In this document: positions 138-55,276 of the stretch, in pieces | How the letters are laid out: each line of letters opens with the position of its first letter | How positions within the stretch are numbered: the stretch's first letter is position 1 | Origin: Scyliorhinus canicula | Taxonomy: Eukaryota | NCBI RefSeq assembly: GCF_902713615.1 | Contig: NC_052156.1 | Span: 151,220,804-151,284,803, forward strand | Length of the DNA: 64,000 nt | Direction: 5' to 3' | Notes under the pieces: generated by a model | The model's database searches: none | Told to the model about the DNA's origin: nothing | The model's input: the letters and a program-made list of their open reading frames with translations, nothing else | Program-made: the position numbers and the translations under genes

Positions 138-1008
138 GTGAACATGTAAGTTTGTTAGCTCAGTTGGCTTGATGGCTAGAGCATGATACAGAAGAACATC
201 AATGGCCGGGTACAACCGCAACACTGGTAGTCCATTCTCCTCAGCTTGCCCCATGTTGGTGGAGTGGTGACCAACAACCTAATACAACCAATTTTTGTGG
301 ACTATGGCTAATTACCTAAAATTACATTTTGCAAGTCCACTAACGTTTACAGGACGAGGTCTTTTCAGTGTTGCAGTTACTCGCACAATCCACCGTCTCC
401 AATGATCCAGCTGCTTGCAGCAATATGGGACTCCCTGGCTGGTCAGGAAGTGAACCACTAAACCAGAGCCCAAAAGTCAATCTTTTTAATAAGTCTTTTT
501 TTTCTTTCATTTCAGTTATTTTCACAAACACCAGCAGGCCAAACTTCTTTATCCAATGCCATTCATTAATAATAACATTCTGATAACATAGACAGTCATT
601 AACTGCTCTTTTTAATAAGCTGCTTAATGTTCACAGCTTAATAATGGTGTTTAGCTTAATTCAGACTTTCGGAAGACTTTTTCCCTGTTATCTATTTCAA
701 TTTTACTTTAAGTAAATGTGCAGTGTTTCCAATTCGTTCGGCGACCAAAGTCCTTAACTGATAATTCAAGAGATGTGTATCATTTGTGCTTAAGTCATTC
801 AGTTACGAACGATTAAACACAAATCACAAGCATTTGTTTCCATAGTTTCTTTCTTCTCACGTTAGCCTTTGTTCTTTCAGTTTGTAACTAGCTTTGAAAA
901 ATATCAGAAGATGATACTAAAATATATTATATATCATTGTAGTCCACTGCACTACAAAATATTTTACAACAACACCTTATCCTATGTCCCTATTAATACT
1001 TTATATAG

Positions 1009-1082
1009 GAAGAAAAGGAACTCTAGAACAAAAAGGAACTCGAGTTGGTCATGGAAGATTGCACCAAAGGCAAGACAACATG
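1009..1082 (+). CDS. Probable cytoplasmic-tail exon of upstream receptor gene: (G)RKGTLEQKGTRVGHGRLHQRQDNM
   Basis: Acceptor ...ttaatactttatatag| at 1008, donor ATG|gtaaac at 1083. The exon is 74 nt and open in phase 1 to 0. Its phase-0 end matches the phase-0 start of exon 7676. Confidence 0.55.
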
Positions 1083-1164
1083 GTAAACTTAATTTCTAAA
1101 TGTTTATCTGTAAATTAGTGGCCTAACATCTGTTACGAGTTCAAATCAGGATTTTTTGGCAGCC

Positions 1165-1400
1165 ATCAATAAAAAAGTATTAAGTAAAAGCTCTTCATCT
1201 GCCACTGGGCCACATGAAGTAGTGGCTTGGTCTGAGAGGATATGGGCAGCAAGATGTATGATAAGTTCAAGTTGATGGAGGGTGGAAGTTGGGAGCCCAG
1301 CCAGGAAAGCATTGGAATAATCAAGTCTACAGGTTTCAGCAGATGACCAGAAGTAACTGACACCAGGGGTTGACCAGTGGGAGCTGTCACTGGAAGGATA
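1165..1400 (-). mobile_element. Old L2-type LINE ORF2 remnant
   Basis: Minus strand translates to ...RLDYSNAFLAGLPTSTLHQLEL..., typical of the L2 ORF2 C-terminus. Confidence 0.6.
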
Positions 1401-1588
1401 CCAGGTGCTCTTGGATTATTTTAACCACTGACAGTCAGTGGTGCTGGAATAATCTGAAAAAATAAACTACGCAGTAATAGAAAATGATGGAAGAATGTAG
1501 GTAGCAAAATAACAAAATTATATTCAGAGAATATTCAGAACATTTCTTATTACATATCTTTGCAATGACTGATGACTTAAGAGCTGAA

Positions 1589-1915
1589 GCGGCCTCACGG
1601 TAGCATGGTGGTTAGCATCAATGCTTCACAGCTCCAGGGTCCCAGGTTCGATTCCCAGCTGGGTCACTGTCTGTGTGGAGTCTGCACGTCCTCCCTGTGT
1701 GTGCGTGGGTTTCCTCCGGGTGCTCCGGTTTCCTCCCACAGTCCAAAGATGTGCGGGTTAGGTGGATTGGCCATGCTAAATTGCCCGTAGTGTAAGGTTA
1801 ATGGGGGGATTGTTGGGATACGGGTTACGTGGGTTTAAGTAGGGTGATCATTGCTCGGCACAACATCGAGGGCCGAAGGGCCTGTTCTGTGCTGTACTGT
1901 TCTAAGCTTCTAAGC
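1589..1915 (+). mobile_element. HE1-type tRNA-derived SINE
   Basis: tRNA-like head (ggtagcatggtggttagc...ggttcgattccc), conserved core, CR1-like tail gcctgttctgtgctgtac; near-identical copies at 2448 and 16817. Confidence 0.85.
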
Positions 1916-1949
1916 TATGCTTGAAGACCCAAACATAGATTGTTTTCAT

Positions 1950-2177
1950 AGGGGGCGGCACAATTGCACATTGGTTAGCACTGCCTCTCGGCACCGAGGA
2001 CCCGGGTTCAATCCTGGCTCCAGGTCACTGTCCGTGTGGAGTGTTCACATTCTCACAGTATCTGCGTGGGTCTTCCCCTACAACTCAAAGATGTGCAGGG
2101 TAGGTGGATTGGCCAAGCTAAAATTGCCCCTTAATTGGAAAAATAAAGAATTGGGTACTCTAAATTTATTTTTTAAA
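1950..2177 (+). mobile_element. HE1-related SINE (short-tail subfamily)
   Basis: Same core (gtaggtggattggcca.gctaaattgcccc) ending ttaattggaaaa...gggtactctaaattt. Confidence 0.8.
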
Positions 2178-2389
2178 AGCAGATTGTTTTGATAGTACTT
2201 ATTTTGATTGTCATGAGATGTGCAATGTAAGCCATTAATTAGCTCTCTCAAATAGACACTGGTATGTCAAAACAAAGAAAATGAACAAATCAAAATCATT
2301 CCACTCTCTGCTTTCCTCAATTGAAGAGCTCATGCCAAACTGTTCTTTATCTATTGAAAACTTTATCTACTCAAAAATTCCAATAGTGA

Positions 2390-2830
2390 AATGAAAATCG
2401 CTTATTGTCACAAGTAGGCTTCAAATGAAGTTACTGTGAAAGCCCCTGGGGCAGCAGGGTAGCATGGTGGTTAGCATAAATGCTTCACAGCTCCAGGGTC
2501 CCAGGTTCGATTCCCGGCTGGGTCACTGTCTGTGTGGAGTCTGCACGTCCTCCCCCTGTGTGCGTGGGTTTTCTCTGGGTGCTCCGGTTTCCTCCCACAG
2601 TCCAAAGATGTGCGGGTTAGGTGGATTGGCCATGCTAAATTGCCCGTAGTGTCCTAATAAAAGTAAGGTTAAGGGGGGGGTTGTTGGGTTACGGGTATAG
2701 GGTGGATACGTGGGTTTGAGTAGGGTGATCATGGCTCGGCACAACATGAAGGGCCTGTTCTGTGCTGTACTGTTCTATGTTCTATGTTCTAGTCGCCACA
2801 TTCTGGCACCTGTTCAGGGGAGGCTGGTAC
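2390..2830 (-). mobile_element. Second-family SINE (minus) split by an HE1 SINE (2448-2790, plus)
   Basis: ...gttactgtgaaagcccct | HE1 | agtcgccacattctggcacctgttc rejoins to the reverse complement of the family seen at 35356. Confidence 0.8.
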
Positions 2831-2947
2831 AATAGTGTATAAGAACAGCAAATTTGTAAAACGAAAATTCAGAGAAAATCTGAGATAAAACGAGCGCCAA
2901 ATTTAGACTTTAAAAGTCTGCAGATTGTATGAGGAAGGAGGGCTGAG

Positions 2948-5900
2948 GAACAAAGAACAAAGAAAATTATAGCACAGGAACAGGCCCTTCGGCCCTCCCA
3001 GCCTGCGCCGATCCAGATCCTTTATCTAAACCTGTCTCCTATTTTCCAAGGTCTACTTCCCTCTGTTCCCGCCCATTCACATACCTGTCTAGATGCTTCT
3101 TAAATGATGCTATCATGCCCGCCTCTACCACCTCCACTGGTAAAGCGTTCCAGGCACCCACCACCCTCTGCGTAAAAAAACTTTCCTCGCACATCTCCCT
3201 TAAACTTTCCCCCTCTCACCTTGAAATCGTGACCCCTTGTAACTGACACCCCCACTCTTGGGAAAAGCTTGTCGCTGTCCACCCTGTCCATACCTCTCAT
3301 AATTTTGTAGACCTCAATCAGGTCCCCCCTCAACATCCGTCTTTCCAACGAAAACAATCCTAATCTACTCAACCTTTCTTCATAGCTAGCACCCTCCATA
3401 CCAGGCAACATCCTGGTGAACCTCCTCTGCAGCTTCTCCAAGGCATCCACATCCTTCTGGTAATGTGGCGACCAGAACTGCACGCAGTATTCCAAAAGTG
3501 GCCGAACCAAAGTCCTATACAACTGTAACATGACCTGCCAACCATTGTACTCAATACCCCGTCCGATGAAGGCAAGCATGCTGTATGCCTTCTTGACCAC
3601 TCTATCAACTTGCGTTGCGACCTTCAGGGTACAATGGACCTGAACTCCCAGGTCTCTCTGCACATCAATTTTCCCCAAGACCCTTCCATTGACCATATAG
3701 TCCGCTCTTGAATTTGATCTTCCAAAATGCATCACCTCGCATTTGCCTGGATTGAACTCCATCTGCCATTTCTCTGCCCAACTCTCCAATCTATCTATAT
3801 TTTGTTGTATTCTCTGACAGTCCTCCTCGCTATCTGCAACTCCACCAATCTTAGTATCATCTGCAAACTTGCTAATCAGACCACCTATACCTTCCTCCAG
3901 GTCATTTATGTAGATCACAAACAACAGTGGTCCGAGCACGGATCCCTGTGGAACACCACTAGTCACCCTTCTCCATTTTGAGACACTCCCTTCCACCACT
4001 ACTCTCTGTCTCCTGTTGCCCAGCCAGTTCTTTATCCATCTAGCTAGTACACCCTGAACCCCATACGACTTCACTTTTTCCATCAACCTGCCATGGGAAA
4101 CCTTATCAAACGCCTTACTAAAGTCCATGTATACGACATCTACAACCTTTCCCTCATCAATGAACTTTGTCACTTCCTCAAAGAATTCTATTAGGTTTGT
4201 AAGACATGACCTTCCCTGCACAAAACCATGCTGCCTATCACTGATAAGTCTATTTTCTTCCAGATGTGAATAGATCCTATCCCTCAGTATCTTCTCCAAC
4301 AGTTTGCCTACCACTGACGTCAAGCTCATGGGTCTATAATTCCCTGGATTACCCCTGCTACCCTTCTTAAACAAAGGGACAACATTAGCAATTCTCCAGT
4401 CCTCCGGGACCTCACCCGAGCTCAAGGATCCTGCAAAGATATCTGTTAAGGCCCCAGCTATTTCGACCTTCGCTTCCCTCAGTAACCTGGGGTAGATCCC
4501 ATCCGGTCCTGGGGACTTGTCCACCTTAATGTCTTTTAGAATACCCAAAACTTCCCCCTTCCGTATGACAACTTGACCGAGAGTATTTAAACATCCATCC
4601 CTAGTTTAAGGGAGATGTGCGTGGAAAGTTTTTTACGCAGAGGGTGGTGGGTGCCTGGAACGCTTTACCAGCGGAGGTGGTAGAGGTGGACACGATAGCA
4701 TCATTTAAGAAGCATCTAGACAGGTATATGAATGGGCGGGAACAGAGAGAAGTAGACCTTGGAAAATAGGAGACAGGTTTAGATTCTGGATCGGCGCAGG
4801 CTGGGAGGGCTGAAGGGCCTGTTCCTGTGCTGTAATTTTCTTTGTTCTTTGTTCTAGCCTCAACATCCGTCTTGTCCCTCTCCTTTGTGAATACCGATGC
4901 AAAGTATTCATTAAGAATCTCACCTATTTCCTCTGACTCCACGCATAAATTCCCTCTTTTGTCTTTAAGTGGGCCAATCCTTTCTCTAGTTACCCTCTTG
5001 CTCCTTACATATGAATAAAATGCTTTGGGATTTTCCTTAACCCTGTTAGCCAAAGATATTTCATGACCCCTTTTAGCCCTCTTTATTGCGCGTTTGAGAT
5101 TCGTCCTACTTTCCCAATATTCCTCCAAAGCTTCATCAGTTTTGAGTTGCCTCGATCCTATGTATGCTTCCTTTTTCATCTTAGCTAGTCCCACAATTTC
5201 ACCCGTCATCCATGGTTCCCTAATCTTGCCATTTCTACCTTTCATTTTCACAGGAACATGTCTGTCCTGCACTCTAATCAACCTTTCCTTAAAAGACTTC
5301 CACATTTCAAATGTGGATTTATCCTTAAACAGCTGCTCCCAATCCCCATTCCCTAGCTCCTGCCAAATTTTGTTATACTCTGCCTTTCCCCAATTTAGTA
5401 CTCTTCCTTTCGGACCCCTCTTGTCCTTGTCCATGAGTATTCTAAAACTTACGGAATTGTGATCGCTATTCCCAAAGTAATCACCGACTGAAACATCAAC
5501 CACCTGGCCGGGATCATTCCCCAATACCAGGTCCAGTATGGCCCCTTCCCGAGTTGGACTATTTACATACTGCTCTAAAAAACTTTCCTGGATGCTCCTT
5601 ACAAACTCTGCTCCATCTACGCCTCCAACACTACACGAATCCCATTCAATGTTGGGGAAGTTAAAATCTCCCATCACAACCACCCTATTGCTCCTACATT
5701 TTTCTATAATCTGTCTGCATATTTGTACCTCTACTTCATGGTCGCTTTTGGGAGGCCTGTAGTAAAGTCCCAACAATGTTACTGCACCCTTCCTATTTCT
5801 CAGCTCCACCCATATTGCCTCAGTGCTCGAATCCTCCATTGTACCCTCCTTAATCACAGCTGTGATATCATCTCTGATGAGTAATGCAACTCCTCCACCC

Positions 5901-7600
5901 CTTCTACCTCCCTCACTATCCCTCCTGAAGCATCTATACCCTGGGATATTCAGTTGCCAGTCCTGCCCTTCCCTCAACCAAGTCTCAGTAATACCAATAG
6001 CATCATATTCCCAGGTACTGATCCAAGCCCTAAGTTCATCTGCCTTACCTGCTACACTTCTCGCATTAAAACAAATGCACCTCAGACCACCTTTGCGTTC
6101 ATCATCTCTTCCCTGTCTACTCTTCCCCTTAGTCACATTGAGTTTATTGTCTCGTACCTTACTGGCTTGAGTTGCTGCTTCTTTACTGACCTCTAACTTC
6201 CTAATCTGGTTCCCATCCCCCTGCCACATTAGTTTAAAACCTCCCCAACAGTGTTAGCAAAAGCACCCCCTAGGACATTGGTTCCAGTCCTGCCCAGGTG
6301 TAGACCATCCGGTTTGTAATGGTCCCACCGCCCCCAGAACTGGTTCCAATGTCCCAAAAATCTGAACCCCTCCCTCCTGCACCATCTCTCAAGCCACGTA
6401 TTCATTCTGACTATTCTTGAATTTCTACTCTGACTGTCCCGTGGCACTGGTAGCAATCCTGAGATTACTACCTTTTTTGAGGTCCTACTTTTTAAACTTA
6501 TCTCCTAACTCCCTAACTTCTGATTGTAGGACCTCATCCCTTTTTTTACCTATATCGTTGGTGCCTATATGCACCACGACAACTGGCTGTTCATCCTCCC
6601 CCTTCAGTATGTCCTGCAGCCGATCGGAGACATCCCCGACTTGAGCACCCGGGAGGCAACATACCATTCGGGAGTCTCGTTTTCGACCACAGAAACGCCT
6701 GTCTACTCCCCTTACAATTGAATCCCCTATGACTATAGCCCTGCCAGTCTTTTTCCCGCCCTTCTGTGCAGCAGAGCCAGCCACGGTGCCATGAGCCTGG
6801 CTACTACTGCCTTCCCCTGGTGAGTCATCTCCCCCAACAGTATCCAAAACGGTATACCTGTTTTGGAGGGAGATGACCGCAGGGAACACCTGCACTGCCT
6901 TCCTGCTCTTTCTCTGCCTTTTGGTCACCCATTCCCTGTCTCCGTCACCAATCCTAATCTGCGGTGTGACCAACTCACTGAACGTGCTATCCACGACCTC
7001 CTCAGCATCGCGGATGCTCCAAAGTGAGTCCATCCGCAGCTCCAGAGCCGTCATACGGTCTAACAGGAGCTGCAGCTGGACACACTTCCCGTACATGAAG
7101 AAGTCAGGGGCATCGGCCGTGTCCCTGAACTCCCACATTGCGCACGAGGAGCATAACATGGGTCTGGGATCTCCTGCCATTTTTACCCTTTACCTTAACT
7201 GATTACAAATATAGTATCAAATAATTAATAAGTGATAGGAATAAAGATTTTACTTACCGATCACAGTACTCACCAACACACGAAGAGTTAAATTTCTCCC
7301 AGCAACTGCTAATTGGAGCACTTTCCTTGCCAGCCAATCAGGTCACTGCTTTGCTGTGATGTCACCCTTCAAGGTAAGTTTTTAAAGAGATAAACTTAGC
7401 TTCCCGACAACCACGGTTGTTTTTTTTTTGGTTAGAGGAGGGGGTAGGGAGGGAAACACTGAGGAAGTGTTTCAGGTTAAATTGTCACTTGACGACAGCC
7501 CCTTCACAAACCACCTTCAAATTAGGCTGACCGCACTGCACGTATGCAAATCTCCCCGGAACAACCACTCAGTAGCTCCGCTCTGCTGCCCTCTGCTGGA
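2948..7600 (-). mobile_element. Near full-length CR1 LINE: ORF1 (Cys-rich N-terminus + SGNH/GDSL esterase, 7180-6229) and ORF2 (APE endonuclease ~6200-4860, RT 4548-3100), disrupted
   Basis: ORF1 motifs IVIGDSIVR, HIGTND, DGLHL. EN motifs GITETWL, MGDFN, SDH. RT motifs QGSVLGP, FADD. (TTCTTTG)n 3' tail near 2948. The 5' boundary is approximate. Confidence 0.92.
4605..4853 (+). mobile_element. 3'-terminal CR1 fragment inserted antisense inside ORF2 of a same-family element
   Basis: Reverse complement closely matches 2948-3200; CTAG is duplicated at 4601-4604 and 4854-4857. Confidence 0.85.
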
Positions 7601-7675
7601 TCAATAAGATAAGATCAGGAAGAGAAGTACAGAAAAAAAATCCATTTGTATGTCTATGTCTTTCCCATTTTGCAG

Positions 7676-7798
7676 GATGAGAACAACGGGAATAATATCT
7701 GCTATGCAGAACTGAAACTGGGAAACATGAAGAAAGTAAGAAAAAAGGAAGAGGAGATTGTCTACAGTACAGTGCTTTTGTCAAAATCTGGTGAATAG
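7676..7798 (+). CDS. Terminal coding exon of an ITIM-bearing receptor: DENNGNNICYAELKLGNMKKVRKKEEEIVYSTVLLSKSGE*
   Basis: Polypyrimidine acceptor tctttcccattttgcag| at 7675. Phase-0 frame open to TAG at 7796-7798. Two I-x-Y-x-x-L/V motifs 20 aa apart, followed by AT-rich non-repeat UTR-like sequence. Confidence 0.85.
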   Translation, partial: DENNGNNICYAELKLGNMKKVRKKEEEIVYSTVLLSKSGE

Positions 7799-9149
7799 GA
7801 CACACAACAAATAATGACGCATGTCATTCTTTAAACTAGTCACAACAGCAGTGAACTGGAATAACGAAAAGCCAAAACAAATCTTTTGGCAGTGGCACAC
7901 ATCACTGAAATGAAACAGAGCCTTTAACCTTTTGAGGACGAAATGTAATTTGAAATTTGCATATTTGTTAAGTTAAAAATACACAAGAACCATCCGGCAA
8001 AGAACCTTAGATCAAACTGTTGCATCTTTGTCATCATTCTCGCAGTTCTTTTCTCTTGCATTATCTTAGAATTGGGCAGTTAGTTGTGTGTCATAATAAT
8101 ACATTAATGCATATATGTCTATGTGCCCTATGATTGTACATGTTTGCATATAATCACTTATCCAAATATGGGTATGTGCTGTCTGAGTGCTCCATTTGTG
8201 TTTGTGCTGTATTTGTTCTGTCTTGCTGCATTTTCATACTTTGTCTGTGGTCTCTGTGTATGTTACTTATGTCCATGCGTGCATCCCTGTTTGGTACGTG
8301 ATGTGCGATGTTGTATTCTCTGTGCTTTGTAAGTATGTGTTTATGTTTGTGCAGAGTAAATGTTTATAATTAGGTTTGGTCTTTTTGTGTACTGCAGTTT
8401 ATTTTGTAAACTTAAATACATATTTAAATTCTGCATCTAGAATGTAATTTTAAAATTATTATGTAACAAACTTGGGCCAGGATTTTTGCCTGACTCATAG
8501 GTCACTTTGCCAGCACCAACTTGTCCTAGTCATTTTTGGAAAGGGGTTGGGATAGAACGGCTCCCAGCAGCAATTGTCTGGTAGCTTGTTCAGTCAATTA
8601 ACAAGCCATTTAAGGCTAGTATCAGAGGCTAACTGGGTACTTCCAGTTGGGCTGTAGGCCCCTTGTGGCATCAGGATCAAGTCATCTGCCAGGTGACAGT
8701 CTCCCTGCAGCAGCAGGGAGGGCCAGAACTCGGGTAACTTTAAGCTTCCCTCGTCCACCTGGCCACAGCTGTGGCTGCAAACAACTTGTCCGGCAACTGT
8801 GGCCATTTTTTCCTTCAAATGGGTTCGAAGTGCCGAGAGGGTGTCTAAGTGGAAGCACCCTTTTTCTCCCTTATATCAATGGCAGACTAGAACTTCATTA
8901 CTGGAGGGCCTCCTATTGACCTGCTAGTTTAGAGTCCCTGCCGGCCATACTTAATCAGAAGGCAAGTCTGCCCTCTGGCTGCTAATTGGCCAATTCAGTA
9001 AAATTTTGTTTTGGGTTGCTGCTTTTTACAGTGTTGAATCAGGAACTGCATTTGATACCAATATTGGACCCCTGACTGTAAATGGAAAAACCTGCCTTTG
9101 GTACAGTTTCTAAAATATCAGAAAATGTTATATTATCGATTAGTGTGTT

Positions 9150-12100
9150 GGCTTTCTTTTTTTTTTTGGAAATGTTTTTTATTAGTTTTCATATTTTATA
9201 TCTAACAAATTATTAGAAAAAAACACGCAAAAATTAACCTGTATATTTACAGGCAAGCATCTTCACAATAACAACTGTGGCCACCCCCTTTAACCGGCAT
9301 ACATAATTTACATTCCCCAATATGGCCGAGGCACATGTTTATAGGCATTTATTTACTATTTGGTTTTGGGCCTTAGCTTGCCATCAGACTGTCGCTTGTG
9401 GCTTTGTCCTTCCTTTTTTTTTTGGGAATAATTTTTATTCAAGTTTTCAACAACAAATCTTATCACAACAGAGAAAAACAGTAACCCCTCCCCTCCAACA
9501 CAAAAACAAATTAACAAGAAAAAAAAATAAGCATAAAACCATGAGAACAAACCCCCGTAACGAACCCGTACCCCACCCCCCCCCACCCCGGCTACCTTTC
9601 CCCCGATTTCTGTCCATTTTCCCCTGATTCTTGGCCACCCGACTATTCTTCCTCTTGTTCGTTGGCCACAAAGAGGTCCCGGAACAATTGCATGAATGGC
9701 TCCCACGTTCTGTGGAAGCCATCGTCTGACCCTCGGATGGCGAATTTGATTTTCTCCATTTGGAGAGATTCCGAGAGGTCGGACAGCCAGTCTGCAGCTC
9801 TGGGCGGTGCTGCTGACCACCAGCCAAACAGGATTCTATGGCGGGCGATCAGGGAGGCAAAGGCAAGGGCATCCGCCCTCCTCCCCAGGAATAGATCTGG
9901 CTGGTCTGAAACCCCGAAGACCTCCACTATCGGGCATGGCTCCACCCTCACCCCCACCACTTTGGACATAGCCTCGAAGAAGGCTGTCTAGTACTCCACA
10001 AGTCTGGGGCAAGACCAGAACATGTGGGTGTGGTTGGCCGGGCCTCTTTGGCACTATTCACATCTGTCCTCCACCTCTGGGAAGAACCTATTCATACGGT
10101 TTCTTGTTAAGTGGGTTCTATGTACCACTTTTAGTTGCGTCAGGCTGAGCCTTGCGCACACGGAGGTGGAGTTGACCCTATGCAGTGCTTCGCTCCAGAG
10201 TCCCCACCCTATCTCAATCCCCAGGTCATCCTCCCATTTCTTTCTTGTTGCGTCCAGTACGGTGCCAGCCCTTTCTACCAGTCGGTCATACATGTCGCTA
10301 CAGTTCCCTTTATCTAGGATACTTGCGTCCAGTAGGTCTTCCAGTCGTGTCTGTCATGGCGGTTGTGGGTACGTCCTTGTCTCCTTTCGTAAGAAGTTTT
10401 TGAGCTGCAGGTACCGTAGCTCGTTCCCCCTGGCTAGCTGAAATTTCTCTGTCAGTTCGTCCAGTGTTGCGATCCTACCGTCCGTGTATAGGTCCCTGAC
10501 TGTCAGTGTCCCTCCGTCCTGCCTCCACCTTTTGAAGGTGGCATCAGTCAGTGCTGGTGTGAACCTATGGTTGTTGCAGATGGGAGCCTTGTTCGACATT
10601 TTGGTCAGGCCAAATTGCTGCCGCAGTTGGTTCCAGGATTGGAGGGTGGCTGTCACCACTGGGCTGCTGGAGTGTTTTTTGGGTGGGGATGGGAGTGCTG
10701 CCGTGGCGAGGGCCCGGAGGGAGGTCTCCATGCAGGAGGCCTCCTCTGCACGCACCCACTCGGCCTCTGGCTCCTGGATCCATCCCCTTACTCGCTCGGC
10801 TGTTGCCGCCCAGTGGTAGAATTGTAGATTTGGGAGGGCTAGCCCCCCCCAACCCCCTCCCCCTGGATTTTGTTTTTTGTAGGACCTTCTTTGGGATCCT
10901 AGCATTTTTACCCCCGCCCCCCCCCCCCCCCCCCCCCCCCCCCATACGAACGCCATGATTAGTTTGTCCAGCACTTTGAAAAAGGCCTTGGGGATGTAGA
11001 TCGGAATAGATCTAAACAGGAAGAGGAACCTGGGCAGTACGTTCATTTTGATCGTCTGGACTCTCCCCGCGAGGGAGAGGGAGAGTGGGAGTGTGCTCCA
11101 TCTTTGCAGGTCCTTTTTTACTTCCTCCGTCAGACTGGTGAGGTTCCATTTGTGGATCCCTTTCCAGTCATGGGCTATTTGGATCCCCAGGTAGTGGAAT
11201 TTGTGTCGGGCTTGTTTGAACGGCAGCCCCTCCCCCCCTCGCGGGTGTACTGGGAAGATCTCGCTTTTGCTCATGTTGAGTTTGTTGCCCAAGAAGGCTC
11301 CAAACTCTTTCAGGAGCGCAATGATTCCGTCCATGCTGCTCTGTGGGTCCGAGATGTAGAGGAGCAGGTCATCTGCATAGAGTGAGACTCTGTGCTCTCT
11401 GCCTCCCCTTCGGATCCCCCTCCAATTTTTTGCTGCCCTGAGCACGATTGCTAGCGGTTCGATTGCTAGTGCGAACAGCAGCGGGGACAGTGGGCATCCT
11501 TGTCTGGTGCCCCTGTGCAGTTAGAAGTATTGGGGGTTAGCACTGTTGGTCCGTACACTCGCCATGGAAGTGTTGTGTAGGAGCTTTACCCAAGCGGTGA
11601 ACCCTGTTCCAAGCCCAAACCGCTCCAGTACCTCTATGAGGTATTTCCATTTGACTCTGTCGAAGGCCTTTTCTGCGTCCATGGAGACGATCACCTCTTG
11701 TGTTCTCTCCCCGGAGGGGGTCATTATCACGTTCAGCAGGCGCCTGATGTTCGAGGTAAGTTGTCTACCTTTGACAAAGCCCGTCTGGTCCTCTGTGACC
11801 ACCTCAGATACACAGTCTTCTAGCCTTTTGGCTAGGATTTTGGCCAGTATTTTGGCGTCTGCGTTCAGCAGGGAGATGGGTCTGTATGACCCACATTCCG
11901 TTGAGTCTTTGTCTTTCTTGGGTATCAGCGAGATTGAGGCATGTGCTAACGTGGGTGGCAACGTGCCCCTAGCTAGCGAGTCTGTGAACATCTCCCACAG
12001 GTGCTGGGCCAGCGCTGTCGCGAATTTTTTGTAGAAGTCTGCCGGGAATCCGTCCGGTCCCGGCGCCTTCCCCATCTGCATGGAGCTAATGCTCTCCATG

Positions 12101-54928: not shown

Positions 54929-55276
54929 GTGAAGGATCTTTCTCTCGGGTTAATGGAATCTTGGGTACAGACATATCACTGCCCTGCACCTTTCCTGTTG
55001 CAGTCAATTTCAATCTGCAGGATCTTGTCATTACCTGGCAGCGAACAGCCAGTTCAATTGTGGTTCACAGCTTCTACAATGAGGAAAACCATCCAGAGTA
55101 TCAAGACTCAGCATTCAGGGGACGGACCAAGCTATTTCCTCAAGAATTCCCCAGAGGGAATGCTGCTGTCAGACTGAAAGGAGCAACTATGTCGGATCAG
55201 GGGAACTACACCTGCTACGTGATTCAAGAGGATGGAAAAGGCTACATTGAGCATTTGGTGGAACTGCAATTGTACG
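54929..55276 (+). CDS. IgV exon of B7/butyrophilin-family type
   Basis: Acceptor ttttcattag|, donor TACG|gtgagt, phase 1-1. LPCTF, VITWQR, VVHSFY, YQDSAFRGRTKLF, GNAAVRL, DQGNYTC give the canonical V-set Cys/Trp plus B7-type motifs. Confidence 0.95.

What the first reader, a model, noticed from the sequence alone, without database searches (positions are those of the whole stretch)
1009..7798. Hidden tail of an inhibitory immunoreceptor with tandem ITIM-type motifs
No long ORF covers it, but a clean acceptor at 7675 opens a 40-aa terminal exon with ICYAEL and IVYSTV, tyrosines 20 aa apart (seen). These fit the ITIM consensus (I/V/L/S)xYxx(L/V), and tandem ITIMs recruit SHP-1/SHP-2 in Siglec, SIRP and KIR-type receptors (established). 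A 74-nt phase 1 to 0 exon at 1009-1082 joins it in frame across a 6.6-kb TE-filled intron (inference).
Basis: partly seen in the sequence, partly recalled or inferred. Interest (0 to 1): 0.72.

Follow-up and report, generated by a model that had tools for sequence, protein, structure and literature searches.

The report
Catshark V-C1 receptor's ITIM tail exons
The two small exons are real: they encode the cytoplasmic tail, with two conserved inhibitory-type tyrosine motifs, of a small-spotted catshark antibody-like (V plus C1 domain) surface receptor that RefSeq already predicts but nobody seems to have studied.

Summary
Observation and reading both hold. The AG at 7674-7675 opens a 40-codon terminal exon (7676-7798) carrying ICYAEL and IVYSTV. 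A full HMMER scan with the 40-aa tail found one protein, RefSeq XP_038667672 ('tyrosine-protein phosphatase non-receptor type substrate 1-like', Scyliorhinus canicula). Its last 65 residues map at 100% to these two exons. Transcript contigs from three studies stop exactly at 7675/7676, and one runs on into the last 30 letters of exon 1009-1082.

The gene spans about 36 kb: leader, V with built-in J, C1, uncharged TM, two tail exons. Most of it lies upstream of the window. Single orthologues occur in eight other sharks with inconsistent automatic names. Five of the six motif-defining positions are invariant.

So this is an annotated but unstudied ITIM-type receptor, not a hidden gene. SHP-1/2 recruitment is inferred, not shown. 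It is not a clear SIRP-alpha orthologue.

The V domain carries a CTLA-4-type YxC-x6-PPP-x5-GxG loop, and a B7-H3-like gene lies about 40 kb downstream. A complex prediction passed its controls, which is a lead only. The scan has already reported similar VJ-C1-TM-ITIM genes on other pieces of this genome.

The parts
1009..1082 (+). Penultimate coding exon (cytoplasmic exon A, 74 nt, phase 1 to 0). It encodes residues 280-304 of isoform X1 (P0002).
   Evidence: tblastn at 100% identity. Splice sites read. Its last 30 letters are joined to 7676 in a transcript contig of run X3. The same exon is present in whale shark (L001 19484-19564).
1083..7675 (+). Last intron, 6,593 nt, mostly transposon sequence.
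   Evidence: Bounded by GT 1083-1084 and AG 7674-7675. The orthologous whale shark intron is only about 2.1 kb.
3100..7180 (-). LINE retrotransposon copy inside the intron: ORF1-like piece, endonuclease and reverse transcriptase.
   Evidence: ORFs listed. Pfam RVT_1 1.4e-36, Exo_endo_phos 1.2e-17, and a weak GDSL-lipase hit at 20.5 bits, below Pfam's cut-off of 32.9.
7676..7798 (+). Coding part of the terminal exon: 40 codons plus TAG, residues 305-344 of isoform X1.
   Evidence: Three transcript contigs begin exactly here. It is the best conserved part of the protein among sharks, at 62-92% identity.
7697..7714 (+). Membrane-proximal ITIM-type motif ICYAEL (Tyr314 of X1, Tyr301 of X2).
   Evidence: The I, Y and L positions are invariant in 8 shark species.
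7757..7774 (+). C-terminal ITIM-type motif IVYSTV (Tyr334 of X1). It reads TVYSSV, an ITSM-type form, in the bamboo shark.
   Evidence: Y and V are invariant; the first position is I, V or T.
7799..9246 (+). 3' untranslated region, minimum extent. No AATAAA or ATTAAA occurs before 13575, so the poly(A) site is not located.
   Evidence: Contigs of X1, X15 and X3 run from 7675 to 8673 (then 8678-9094), 9166 and 9246. Signal scan.

Best explanation
Window 1009-1082 and 7676-7798 are the last two coding exons of a transcribed small-spotted catshark gene. RefSeq proteins XP_038667670, XP_038667672 and XP_038667673 come from it, and its coding range is about 36 kb. The rest of the gene lies upstream of the window.

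The product is a type I membrane receptor. It has a leader, a non-rearranging V domain with a germline J-like strand, one C1-set domain, an uncharged transmembrane helix and a 65-residue disordered tail.

The tail ends in two ITIM-type motifs 20 residues apart. The likely mechanism is inferred. After ligand engagement a Src-family kinase phosphorylates both tyrosines. The doubly phosphorylated tail then docks the tandem SH2 domains of SHP-1/SHP-2, and possibly other SH2 proteins. This damps signalling from nearby activating receptors, as in SIRP-alpha, PECAM-1, KIR or PD-1.

Shown here: the exons, their splicing, the protein architecture and the motif conservation. Inferred: phosphorylation, phosphatase recruitment, the expressing cell type and the ligand.
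For: - The 40-aa tail hits a single protein among 1.84 billion, 100% over its last 40 residues.
- tblastn maps residues 280-304 and 305-344 to the two exons at 100%.
- The gene range is 36,254 bp on a 169.8-Mb chromosome of GCA_902713615.2.
- Transcript contigs in runs X1, X3 and X15 (three studies) all start at 7675/7676. They extend 936, 883 and 494 letters beyond it, off the stretch that was laid.
- The X3 overhang equals window 1052-1081.
- Pfam: V-set 2.1e-13 and C1-set 1.2e-6, both above their cut-offs.
- The model shows a TM helix at 247-278 and a low-confidence tail with almost no secondary structure.
- Orthologues exist in eight other sharks, spanning Galeomorphii and Squalomorphii.
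- The terminal exon is the best conserved part of the protein.
- Five of 6 motif-defining positions are invariant, against 12 of 59 other tail positions. No orthologue has a charged residue in the TM core.
- The same six-exon layout is found in whale shark.
Against: - No experiment or read-level evidence bears on phosphorylation or SHP binding.
- dN/dS of the two tail exons between catshark and whale shark is about 0.55 on 64 codons, which is only mild constraint.
- Shark genomes evolve slowly. The flanking intron is about 80% identical over its aligned positions, so conservation is less telling than it looks.
- The species in the Fisher test are not independent.
- Both motifs also fit the YxxPhi sorting consensus.
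- The one set of raw oligo-dT RNA reads that was laid had no read on the exon (X22), so tissue and expression level are unknown.
- The runs holding the transcript are RNA only by guess. Their contigs break at the splice site, which DNA contigs would not do.
Confidence: 0.8

Rival explanations
1. The tail tyrosines are not mainly SHP-1/2 docking sites. They act as YxxPhi endocytic or sorting signals, as in CTLA-4. Or they recruit other SH2 proteins such as Csk, SHIP or SAP-type adaptors, so the receptor is not simply inhibitory.
For: YAEL and YSTV both fit YxxPhi. The distal motif is TVYSSV, an ITSM-type form, in Chiloscyllium. The 20-residue spacing is at the short end of known tandem ITIM pairs (my own knowledge, not tested here).
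Against: The residue two positions before each tyrosine (I, or I/V/T) is conserved. It matters for ITIM/ITSM recognition but not for YxxPhi sorting. An uncharged TM and a tandem motif are the classic inhibitory layout.
Confidence: 0.13
2. The gene is the catshark orthologue of SIRP-alpha, as the RefSeq name suggests. It would bind CD47 and work exactly like mammalian SIRP-alpha.
For: The RefSeq automatic name. SIRP-alpha and SIRP-gamma are among the PDB sequence matches (2wng at 3.1e-18, 4i2x at 4.6e-17). SIRP-alpha appears among the Foldseek Swiss-Prot hits.
Against: There is one C1 domain, not two, and two tail tyrosines, not four. Antibody light chains and UrIg2 match as well or better. Orthologues are named Ig kappa-like, CEACAM1-like or uncharacterized by the same pipeline. 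The invariant PPP loop is not, to my knowledge, a SIRP feature.
Confidence: 0.05
3. The ORF is a chance open frame or a decayed gene remnant, and the motif pair means nothing.
For: ITIM-consensus pairs arise by chance: five are found in the window's open frames. The splice sites of 1009-1082 are unremarkable.
Against: Spliced transcript contigs in three studies. An intact 344-aa product. Intact orthologues with the same exons in other sharks.
Confidence: 0.02

Closest known systems
SIRP-alpha (PTPNS1/SHPS-1) and the SIRP paired-receptor family
   Same: A non-rearranging V domain with a J-like strand is followed by C1-set Ig. It is a type I membrane protein with an uncharged TM and a tyrosine-motif tail of the kind that docks SHP-1/2. 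The RefSeq name is derived from it.
   Different: It has one C1 domain instead of two and one ITIM pair instead of two. Sequence similarity is no higher than to Ig light chains. The V domain has a PPP loop. No activating, charged-TM twin was found in the searches run.
UrIg / UrIg2, the non-rearranging elasmobranch antigen-receptor-like genes (PMC12227049; PDB 9dmx)
   Same: It is elasmobranch-only so far, with a germline-joined VJ domain followed by a C1 domain. UrIg2 V-C1 is the best PDB match of the orthologue profile (5.5e-24) and appears in the Foldseek list.
   Different: UrIg2 has V plus many C domains, forms disulfide-linked dimers and is most highly expressed in liver and gill; UrIg protein lies in extracellular matrix. 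That paper never uses the term ITIM (0 occurrences). With the single sequence, UrIg2 scores no better than light chains.
CD28/CTLA-4 family, including CD28X and PD-1 (PMC11599192)
   Same: The FG loop reads YxC-x6-PPP-x5-GxG in every orthologue. That is the signature the paper gives for CTLA-4 and CD28X. The tail has paired inhibitory motifs, like PD-1 and CD28HL3. PD-1 family is the top language-model look-alike of the V domain.
   Different: The family is defined by a single V domain, and this protein adds a C1 domain. Its V fold ranks nearest to TCR and antibody V domains, with no CTLA-4 or CD28 among the top rows. Its tail motifs differ from YVKM, YMNM and EYEDM.
Other tandem-ITIM IgSF receptors (PECAM-1, KIR2DL, LAIR-1, CEACAM1, Siglecs)
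   Same: It has two [ILV]xYxx[LV] motifs about 20-30 residues apart at the end of a disordered tail, and an uncharged TM.
   Different: Those ectodomains are C2/I-set or Siglec-type V, not VJ-C1. No sequence relationship was detected.

Membership tests
ITIM-bearing inhibitory IgSF receptor (functional class) | Type I membrane protein with an Ig ectodomain and a TM segment lacking a charged residue | tested here: met
   V-set and C1-set hits. Predicted TM helix at 247-278. No K, R, D or E in the TM core of any orthologue.
ITIM-bearing inhibitory IgSF receptor (functional class) | At least one cytoplasmic [ILVS]xYxx[LVI] motif, conserved among orthologues | tested here: met
   ICYAEL and IVYSTV. 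Five of 6 defining positions are invariant in 8 sharks.
ITIM-bearing inhibitory IgSF receptor (functional class) | Tyrosine phosphorylation and recruitment of SHP-1, SHP-2 or SHIP, with inhibition of activating signals | not testable with these tools
   This needs phosphopeptide pull-down and cell assays.
SIRP family | Ectodomain of one V-set and two C1-set domains | tested here: not met
   Only one C1-set domain lies between the V domain and the TM. The whale shark gene also has a single C1 exon.
SIRP family | Closer in sequence to SIRPs than to other VJ-C1 proteins | tested here: not met
   Profile search: UrIg2 5.5e-24, SIRP-alpha 3.1e-18, single Fab light chain 1.2e-17. Single sequence: light chains, UrIg2 and SIRP-alpha all score about 54-55 bits.
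SIRP family | Binds CD47; synteny with SIRPA | not tested
   No tool gave the flanking catshark genes beyond the window. Binding needs experiments.
CD28/CTLA-4 family | Single extracellular V domain (PMC11599192) | tested here: not met
   A C1-set domain follows the V domain.
CD28/CTLA-4 family | PPP (or related Pro) motif in the CDR3-like loop at a canonical distance from YxC, followed by GxG as in CTLA-4 | tested here: met
   YxC-x6-PPP-x5-GxG in all orthologues. P123-125, G133 and T134 are invariant.
CD28/CTLA-4 family | V domain groups with the family by overall sequence or fold | tested here: inconclusive
   Top sequence and fold matches are TCR and antibody V domains. PD-1 is rank 10 in Swiss-Prot models, and no CTLA-4 or CD28 is listed. 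The lists are crowded by antigen receptors, and no tree could be built.
UrIg/UrIg2 | VJ domain followed by three or more C domains; dimeric; extracellular-matrix or liver expression (PMC12227049) | tested here: not met
   The architecture here is V-C1-TM-ITIM only. Expression and dimerisation were not tested.

The most novel reading that the evidence does not exclude
This is a shark co-inhibitory receptor that presents a CTLA-4-type PPP ligand-binding loop on an antigen-receptor-like VJ-C1 ectodomain. Its ligand would be a B7-family protein, possibly the B7-H3-like gene about 40 kb downstream (IgV exon 54929-55276).

That would make it an undescribed branch linking the CD28/CTLA-4 family to VJ-C1 receptors. 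It would also be a natural receptor-ligand gene pair for a B7-H3-like molecule, whose receptor in mammals, to my knowledge, has not been firmly identified.

Support:
- The loop signature is invariant in all orthologues.
- The neighbour's IgV is closest to CD276 (5.7e-33).
- In a complex prediction the PPP loop (residues 119, 121-127) sits on the B7-like IgV, with score 0.79 against 0.47 for the best of 3 controls.
- That mark was reached by 51 of 78 solved complexes and 2 of 108 mismatched pairs.
- The three runs agree in at least 98% of contacts, and the partner's pLDDT is at least 92.

The pass may be the model's memory of CTLA-4/B7 complexes. It does not say which B7 member binds.
Probability: 0.15. 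Interest if true: 0.7.

Novelty: new member of a known kind. Interest (0 to 1): 0.4.

Why it matters
The finding itself is ordinary. It shows that a tool-less reading of raw shark DNA recovered two true tail exons of an annotated gene across a 6.6-kb transposon-filled intron.

The gene has more interest than its annotation suggests.
- It is a single-copy receptor conserved across sharks.
- It is built like one chain of an antigen receptor (VJ plus C1) but wired for inhibition.
- The same annotation pipeline names it four different ways in different species.
- I found no paper on it in the library searched.

It adds to the set of non-rearranging VJ-C1 genes (SIRP, UrIg/UrIg2 and the other catshark genes this scan has reported) that bear on how antigen receptors and paired or co-inhibitory receptors arose. 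If the CTLA-4-type loop really binds a B7-family ligand, the gene would join two receptor families usually treated as separate.

Tried and rejected
- **Relic ITIM exon after the 1082 donor.** tblastn read-through gave WPNICY-EFKSG. A DNA alignment scored 15, which is the mean for random window pieces, so this is chance.
- **Relatives outside sharks.** Three word-index searches (whole protein, orthologue profile, V domain alone) returned only the orthologues. That index needs shared 5-mers, so the blank says little.
- **Catshark DNA upstream of the window.** The upstream exon positions therefore rest on the gene range and on unchecked earlier notes.
- **Whole-protein AlphaFold model.** Confidence is poor (pLDDT 54). 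Its fold matches (tapasin, CD80, SIRP-alpha, TCR gamma/delta, Fab, UrIg2) show only a generic V-C1 arrangement.
- **V-only model.** pLDDT 76. It did not single out CTLA-4 or CD28.
- **Language-model look-alikes.** They are generic V-set clusters.
- **Raw oligo-dT reads of X22.** They gave no coverage of the exon, so there is no strand, start or end information.
- **Whale shark linkage.** No B7-like IgV lies within 10 kb downstream of the whale shark orthologue, so conserved linkage could not be tested.
- **dN/dS on the tail exons.** The sample is too small to be decisive.
Full report
**What is in the sequence**

At 7650-7675 a pyrimidine-rich tract ends in AG (7674-7675). From 7676 an open frame of 40 codons runs to TAG at 7796-7798. 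It contains ICYAEL (7697-7714) and IVYSTV (7757-7774), with the tyrosines 20 residues apart.

At 1007-1008 an AG and at 1083-1084 a GT bound a 74-nt piece. Read in phase 1-to-0, it is open and basic.

By sequence alone neither feature stands out.
- Between 1 and 7675 there are 882 open AG..GT pieces ending in phase 0.
- The splice sites of 1009-1082 are middling: pyrimidine fraction 0.7, donor 6 of 9.
- The window's open frames hold five ITIM-consensus pairs at 15-35 residues.

The case therefore rests on outside evidence.

**Identity**

A full HMMER scan of 1.84 billion representative proteins with the 40-residue tail returned one hit. It is 100% identical over the last 40 residues of a 331-aa protein.

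That protein is RefSeq XP_038667672.1, 'tyrosine-protein phosphatase non-receptor type substrate 1-like isoform X2' of Scyliorhinus canicula. It has two sister isoforms:
- X1, 344 aa, the full form.
- X3, 308 aa, which lacks the 36-residue TM exon.
- X2 itself lacks the 13-residue J-like strand.

tblastn maps residues 280-304 of X1 to window 1008-1082 and residues 305-344 to 7676-7795, both at 100%.

The gene's range is 36,254 bp on a 169.8-Mb chromosome of GCA_902713615.2. The leader, V, C1 and TM exons therefore lie upstream of the window. This agrees with earlier unchecked notes that place a V-exon FG loop about 27 kb, and a C1-TM intron about 20 kb, before the window start.

**Transcription**

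Contigs of three runs from three studies were laid on 7000-9999. In each run one long contig begins exactly at 7675/7676.

| Run | Contig length (nt) | Runs to | Letters beyond 7675 |
|---|---|---|---|
| X1 | 1935 | 8673, then a second contig 8678-9094 | 936 |
| X3 | 2454 | 9246 | 883 |
| X15 | 1986 | 9166 | 494 |

For X3 the overhang printed before 7675 is identical to window 1052-1081. The G of 1082 is absorbed by the G at 7675.

DNA contigs would run on into the intron, so these are transcript contigs, although the runs are labelled RNA only by guess. The 3' UTR is at least 1.4 kb. No canonical poly(A) signal occurs before 13575.

One raw oligo-dT run (X22) had no read on the exon, so tissue and expression level are unknown. 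Run X3 carries A>G at 7715. This changes the lysine just after ICYAEL to glutamate, the residue seen in S. torazame and Mustelus.

**The intron**

The 6,593-nt intron holds a minus-strand LINE:
- reverse transcriptase, 3100-4548;
- endonuclease, 4601-6229;
- an ORF1-like piece with only a weak, sub-threshold GDSL-lipase hit, 6485-7180.

It also holds repeated SINE-like pieces. In whale shark the same two exons are only about 2.1 kb apart.

**The protein**

Pfam finds V-set at 30-139 (2.1e-13) and C1-set at 147-225 (1.2e-6), both above their cut-offs.

The AlphaFold model is weak overall (pLDDT 54). It shows two beta-sandwich domains, a TM helix at 247-278 and a low-confidence tail with almost no secondary structure. 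The TM core has no charged residue in any orthologue.

The V domain ends in a J-like strand (IGKGTMLKVT in catshark). Its FG loop reads YxC-x6-PPP-x5-GxG.

**Relatives**

One orthologue per species was found in eight other sharks:
- S. torazame (90% identity)
- Mustelus asterias (about 75-77%, partial model)
- Rhincodon, Chiloscyllium, Stegostoma, Heterodontus, Pristiophorus and Heptranchias (58-63%)

They cover both great shark lineages. Their automatic names disagree: SIRP-alpha-like, Ig kappa light chain-like, CEACAM1-like or uncharacterized.

Whale shark has the same six exons. The terminal exon is the best conserved part, at 62-82% identity in the more distant sharks (92% in S. torazame), against 58-65% for the V domain.

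Motif 1 is I[CY]Y[AT][EQ]L and motif 2 is [IVT]VYS[TSA]V in all eight sequences with an intact C-terminus. Five of the six motif-defining positions are invariant, against 12 of 59 other tail positions (Fisher one-sided p = 0.004; the species are not independent).

dN/dS between catshark and whale shark is about 0.55 for the tail exons, on very few codons. Shark DNA changes slowly, so this conservation is supportive rather than compelling.

No relatives outside sharks were retrieved. The index used needs shared 5-mers, so that blank means little.

**Which family**

By sequence the ectodomain is about equally like several proteins.

| Match | Orthologue profile | Single sequence |
|---|---|---|
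| UrIg2 V-C1 (9dmx) | 5.5e-24, best | about 54-55 bits |
| SIRP-alpha (2wng) | 3.1e-18 | about 54-55 bits |
| Single antibody light chain | 1.2e-17 | about 54-55 bits |

Fold searches give TCR gamma/delta, Fab and UrIg2 among solved structures, and tapasin/TAPBPR, CD80 and SIRP-alpha among Swiss-Prot models. That is a generic V-C1 arrangement. The V domain alone is nearest to TCR and antibody V domains.

- **SIRP-alpha.** It fails the architecture: one C1 domain rather than two, and one motif pair rather than two.
- **UrIg/UrIg2.** It fails the architecture: those have many C domains, and the UrIg2 paper never uses the term ITIM.
- **CD28/CTLA-4 family.** It fails the defining feature of a single V domain. 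Yet it carries exactly the loop signature that the paper gives for CTLA-4 and CD28X.

I therefore file it as an unstudied member of the broad kind 'non-rearranging VJ-C1 receptors with an ITIM tail'. The scan has already reported similar genes on other pieces of this genome.

**Mechanism**

Shown: a spliced, conserved gene for a type I V-C1 receptor with an uncharged TM and two conserved ITIM-type motifs.

Inferred from established ITIM biology (SIRP-alpha, PECAM-1, KIR, PD-1): ligand binding is followed by Src-family phosphorylation of both tyrosines. The tandem SH2 domains of SHP-1/2 then dock, and nearby activating signals are dephosphorylated.

The 20-residue spacing is at the short end of known pairs (my own knowledge). 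Both motifs also fit YxxPhi sorting signals, which is the main rival.

**A lead beyond the finding**

About 40 kb downstream on the same strand lies a phase 1-1 IgV exon (54929-55276). It is most like CD276/B7-H3 (5.7e-33), then VTCN1. Its words occur in 18 RNA-like runs of 8 studies, including X1-X3.

CTLA-4 and CD28 bind B7 proteins through their PPP loop, so I ran the one complex prediction allowed: receptor V domain against this IgV.
- The score is 0.79, against 0.47 for the best of 3 controls.
- The mark was reached by 51 of 78 solved complexes and 2 of 108 mismatched pairs.
- On eukaryotes the mark was reached by 39 of 65 solved pairs with no like complex among older structures, and by 2 of 126 unrelated pairs.
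- The three runs agree in at least 98% of contacts.
- The partner's pLDDT is at least 92.
- The interface uses residues 119 and 121-127 (the PPP loop), 54-57, 75, 77-79 and 82.

The model supports binding; it does not show it. The pair resembles solved CTLA-4/B7 complexes, so the pass may be memory of those. It does not tell which B7 member binds. I give this reading about 15%.

**Verdict**

The object is an already annotated but undescribed shark inhibitory-type V-C1 receptor. It is ordinary as a gene-finding result and moderately interesting as a family member.

Noticed in passing
window 54929-55276 (+): A phase 1-1 IgV exon of a B7-family gene. It is closest to CD276/B7-H3 (5.7e-33) and then VTCN1 among solved structures. 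Its words are held by 18 RNA-like runs in 8 studies. It lies about 40 kb downstream of the receptor's stop codon, on the same strand.
   Followed up: partly
window 7715: Run X3's transcript contig has A>G here. This turns the lysine right after ICYAEL into glutamate, the residue found in S. torazame and Mustelus. It is probably a catshark polymorphism.
   Followed up: no
window 1605-1790 and 2464-2649 (+): Two near-identical 61-codon open frames (MVVSINASQLQGPRFDS...) mark repeated SINE-like elements in the intron. A related piece lies at 1917-2192.
   Followed up: no
window 9100-9999: RNA-like contig depth rises by orders of magnitude, and raw oligo-dT reads of X22 pile up on the + strand from about 9612-9623. 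This looks like a highly expressed repeat family just beyond the receptor's 3' UTR. It breaks the transcript contigs, so the true 3' end is hidden.
   Followed up: no
P0001 and P0003 (RefSeq isoforms X2 and X3): Isoform X2 uses an internal donor that removes the 13-residue J-like G strand of the V domain. Isoform X3 skips the 36-residue TM exon in frame, predicting a soluble form that keeps the 'cytoplasmic' tail. Neither was checked against reads.
   Followed up: no
L001 19484-19564 (whale shark): The whale shark model uses a donor 6 nt further downstream than catshark in the penultimate exon. It adds two residues (QDSIVN against QDNM), so the donor position has shifted within sharks.
   Followed up: partly
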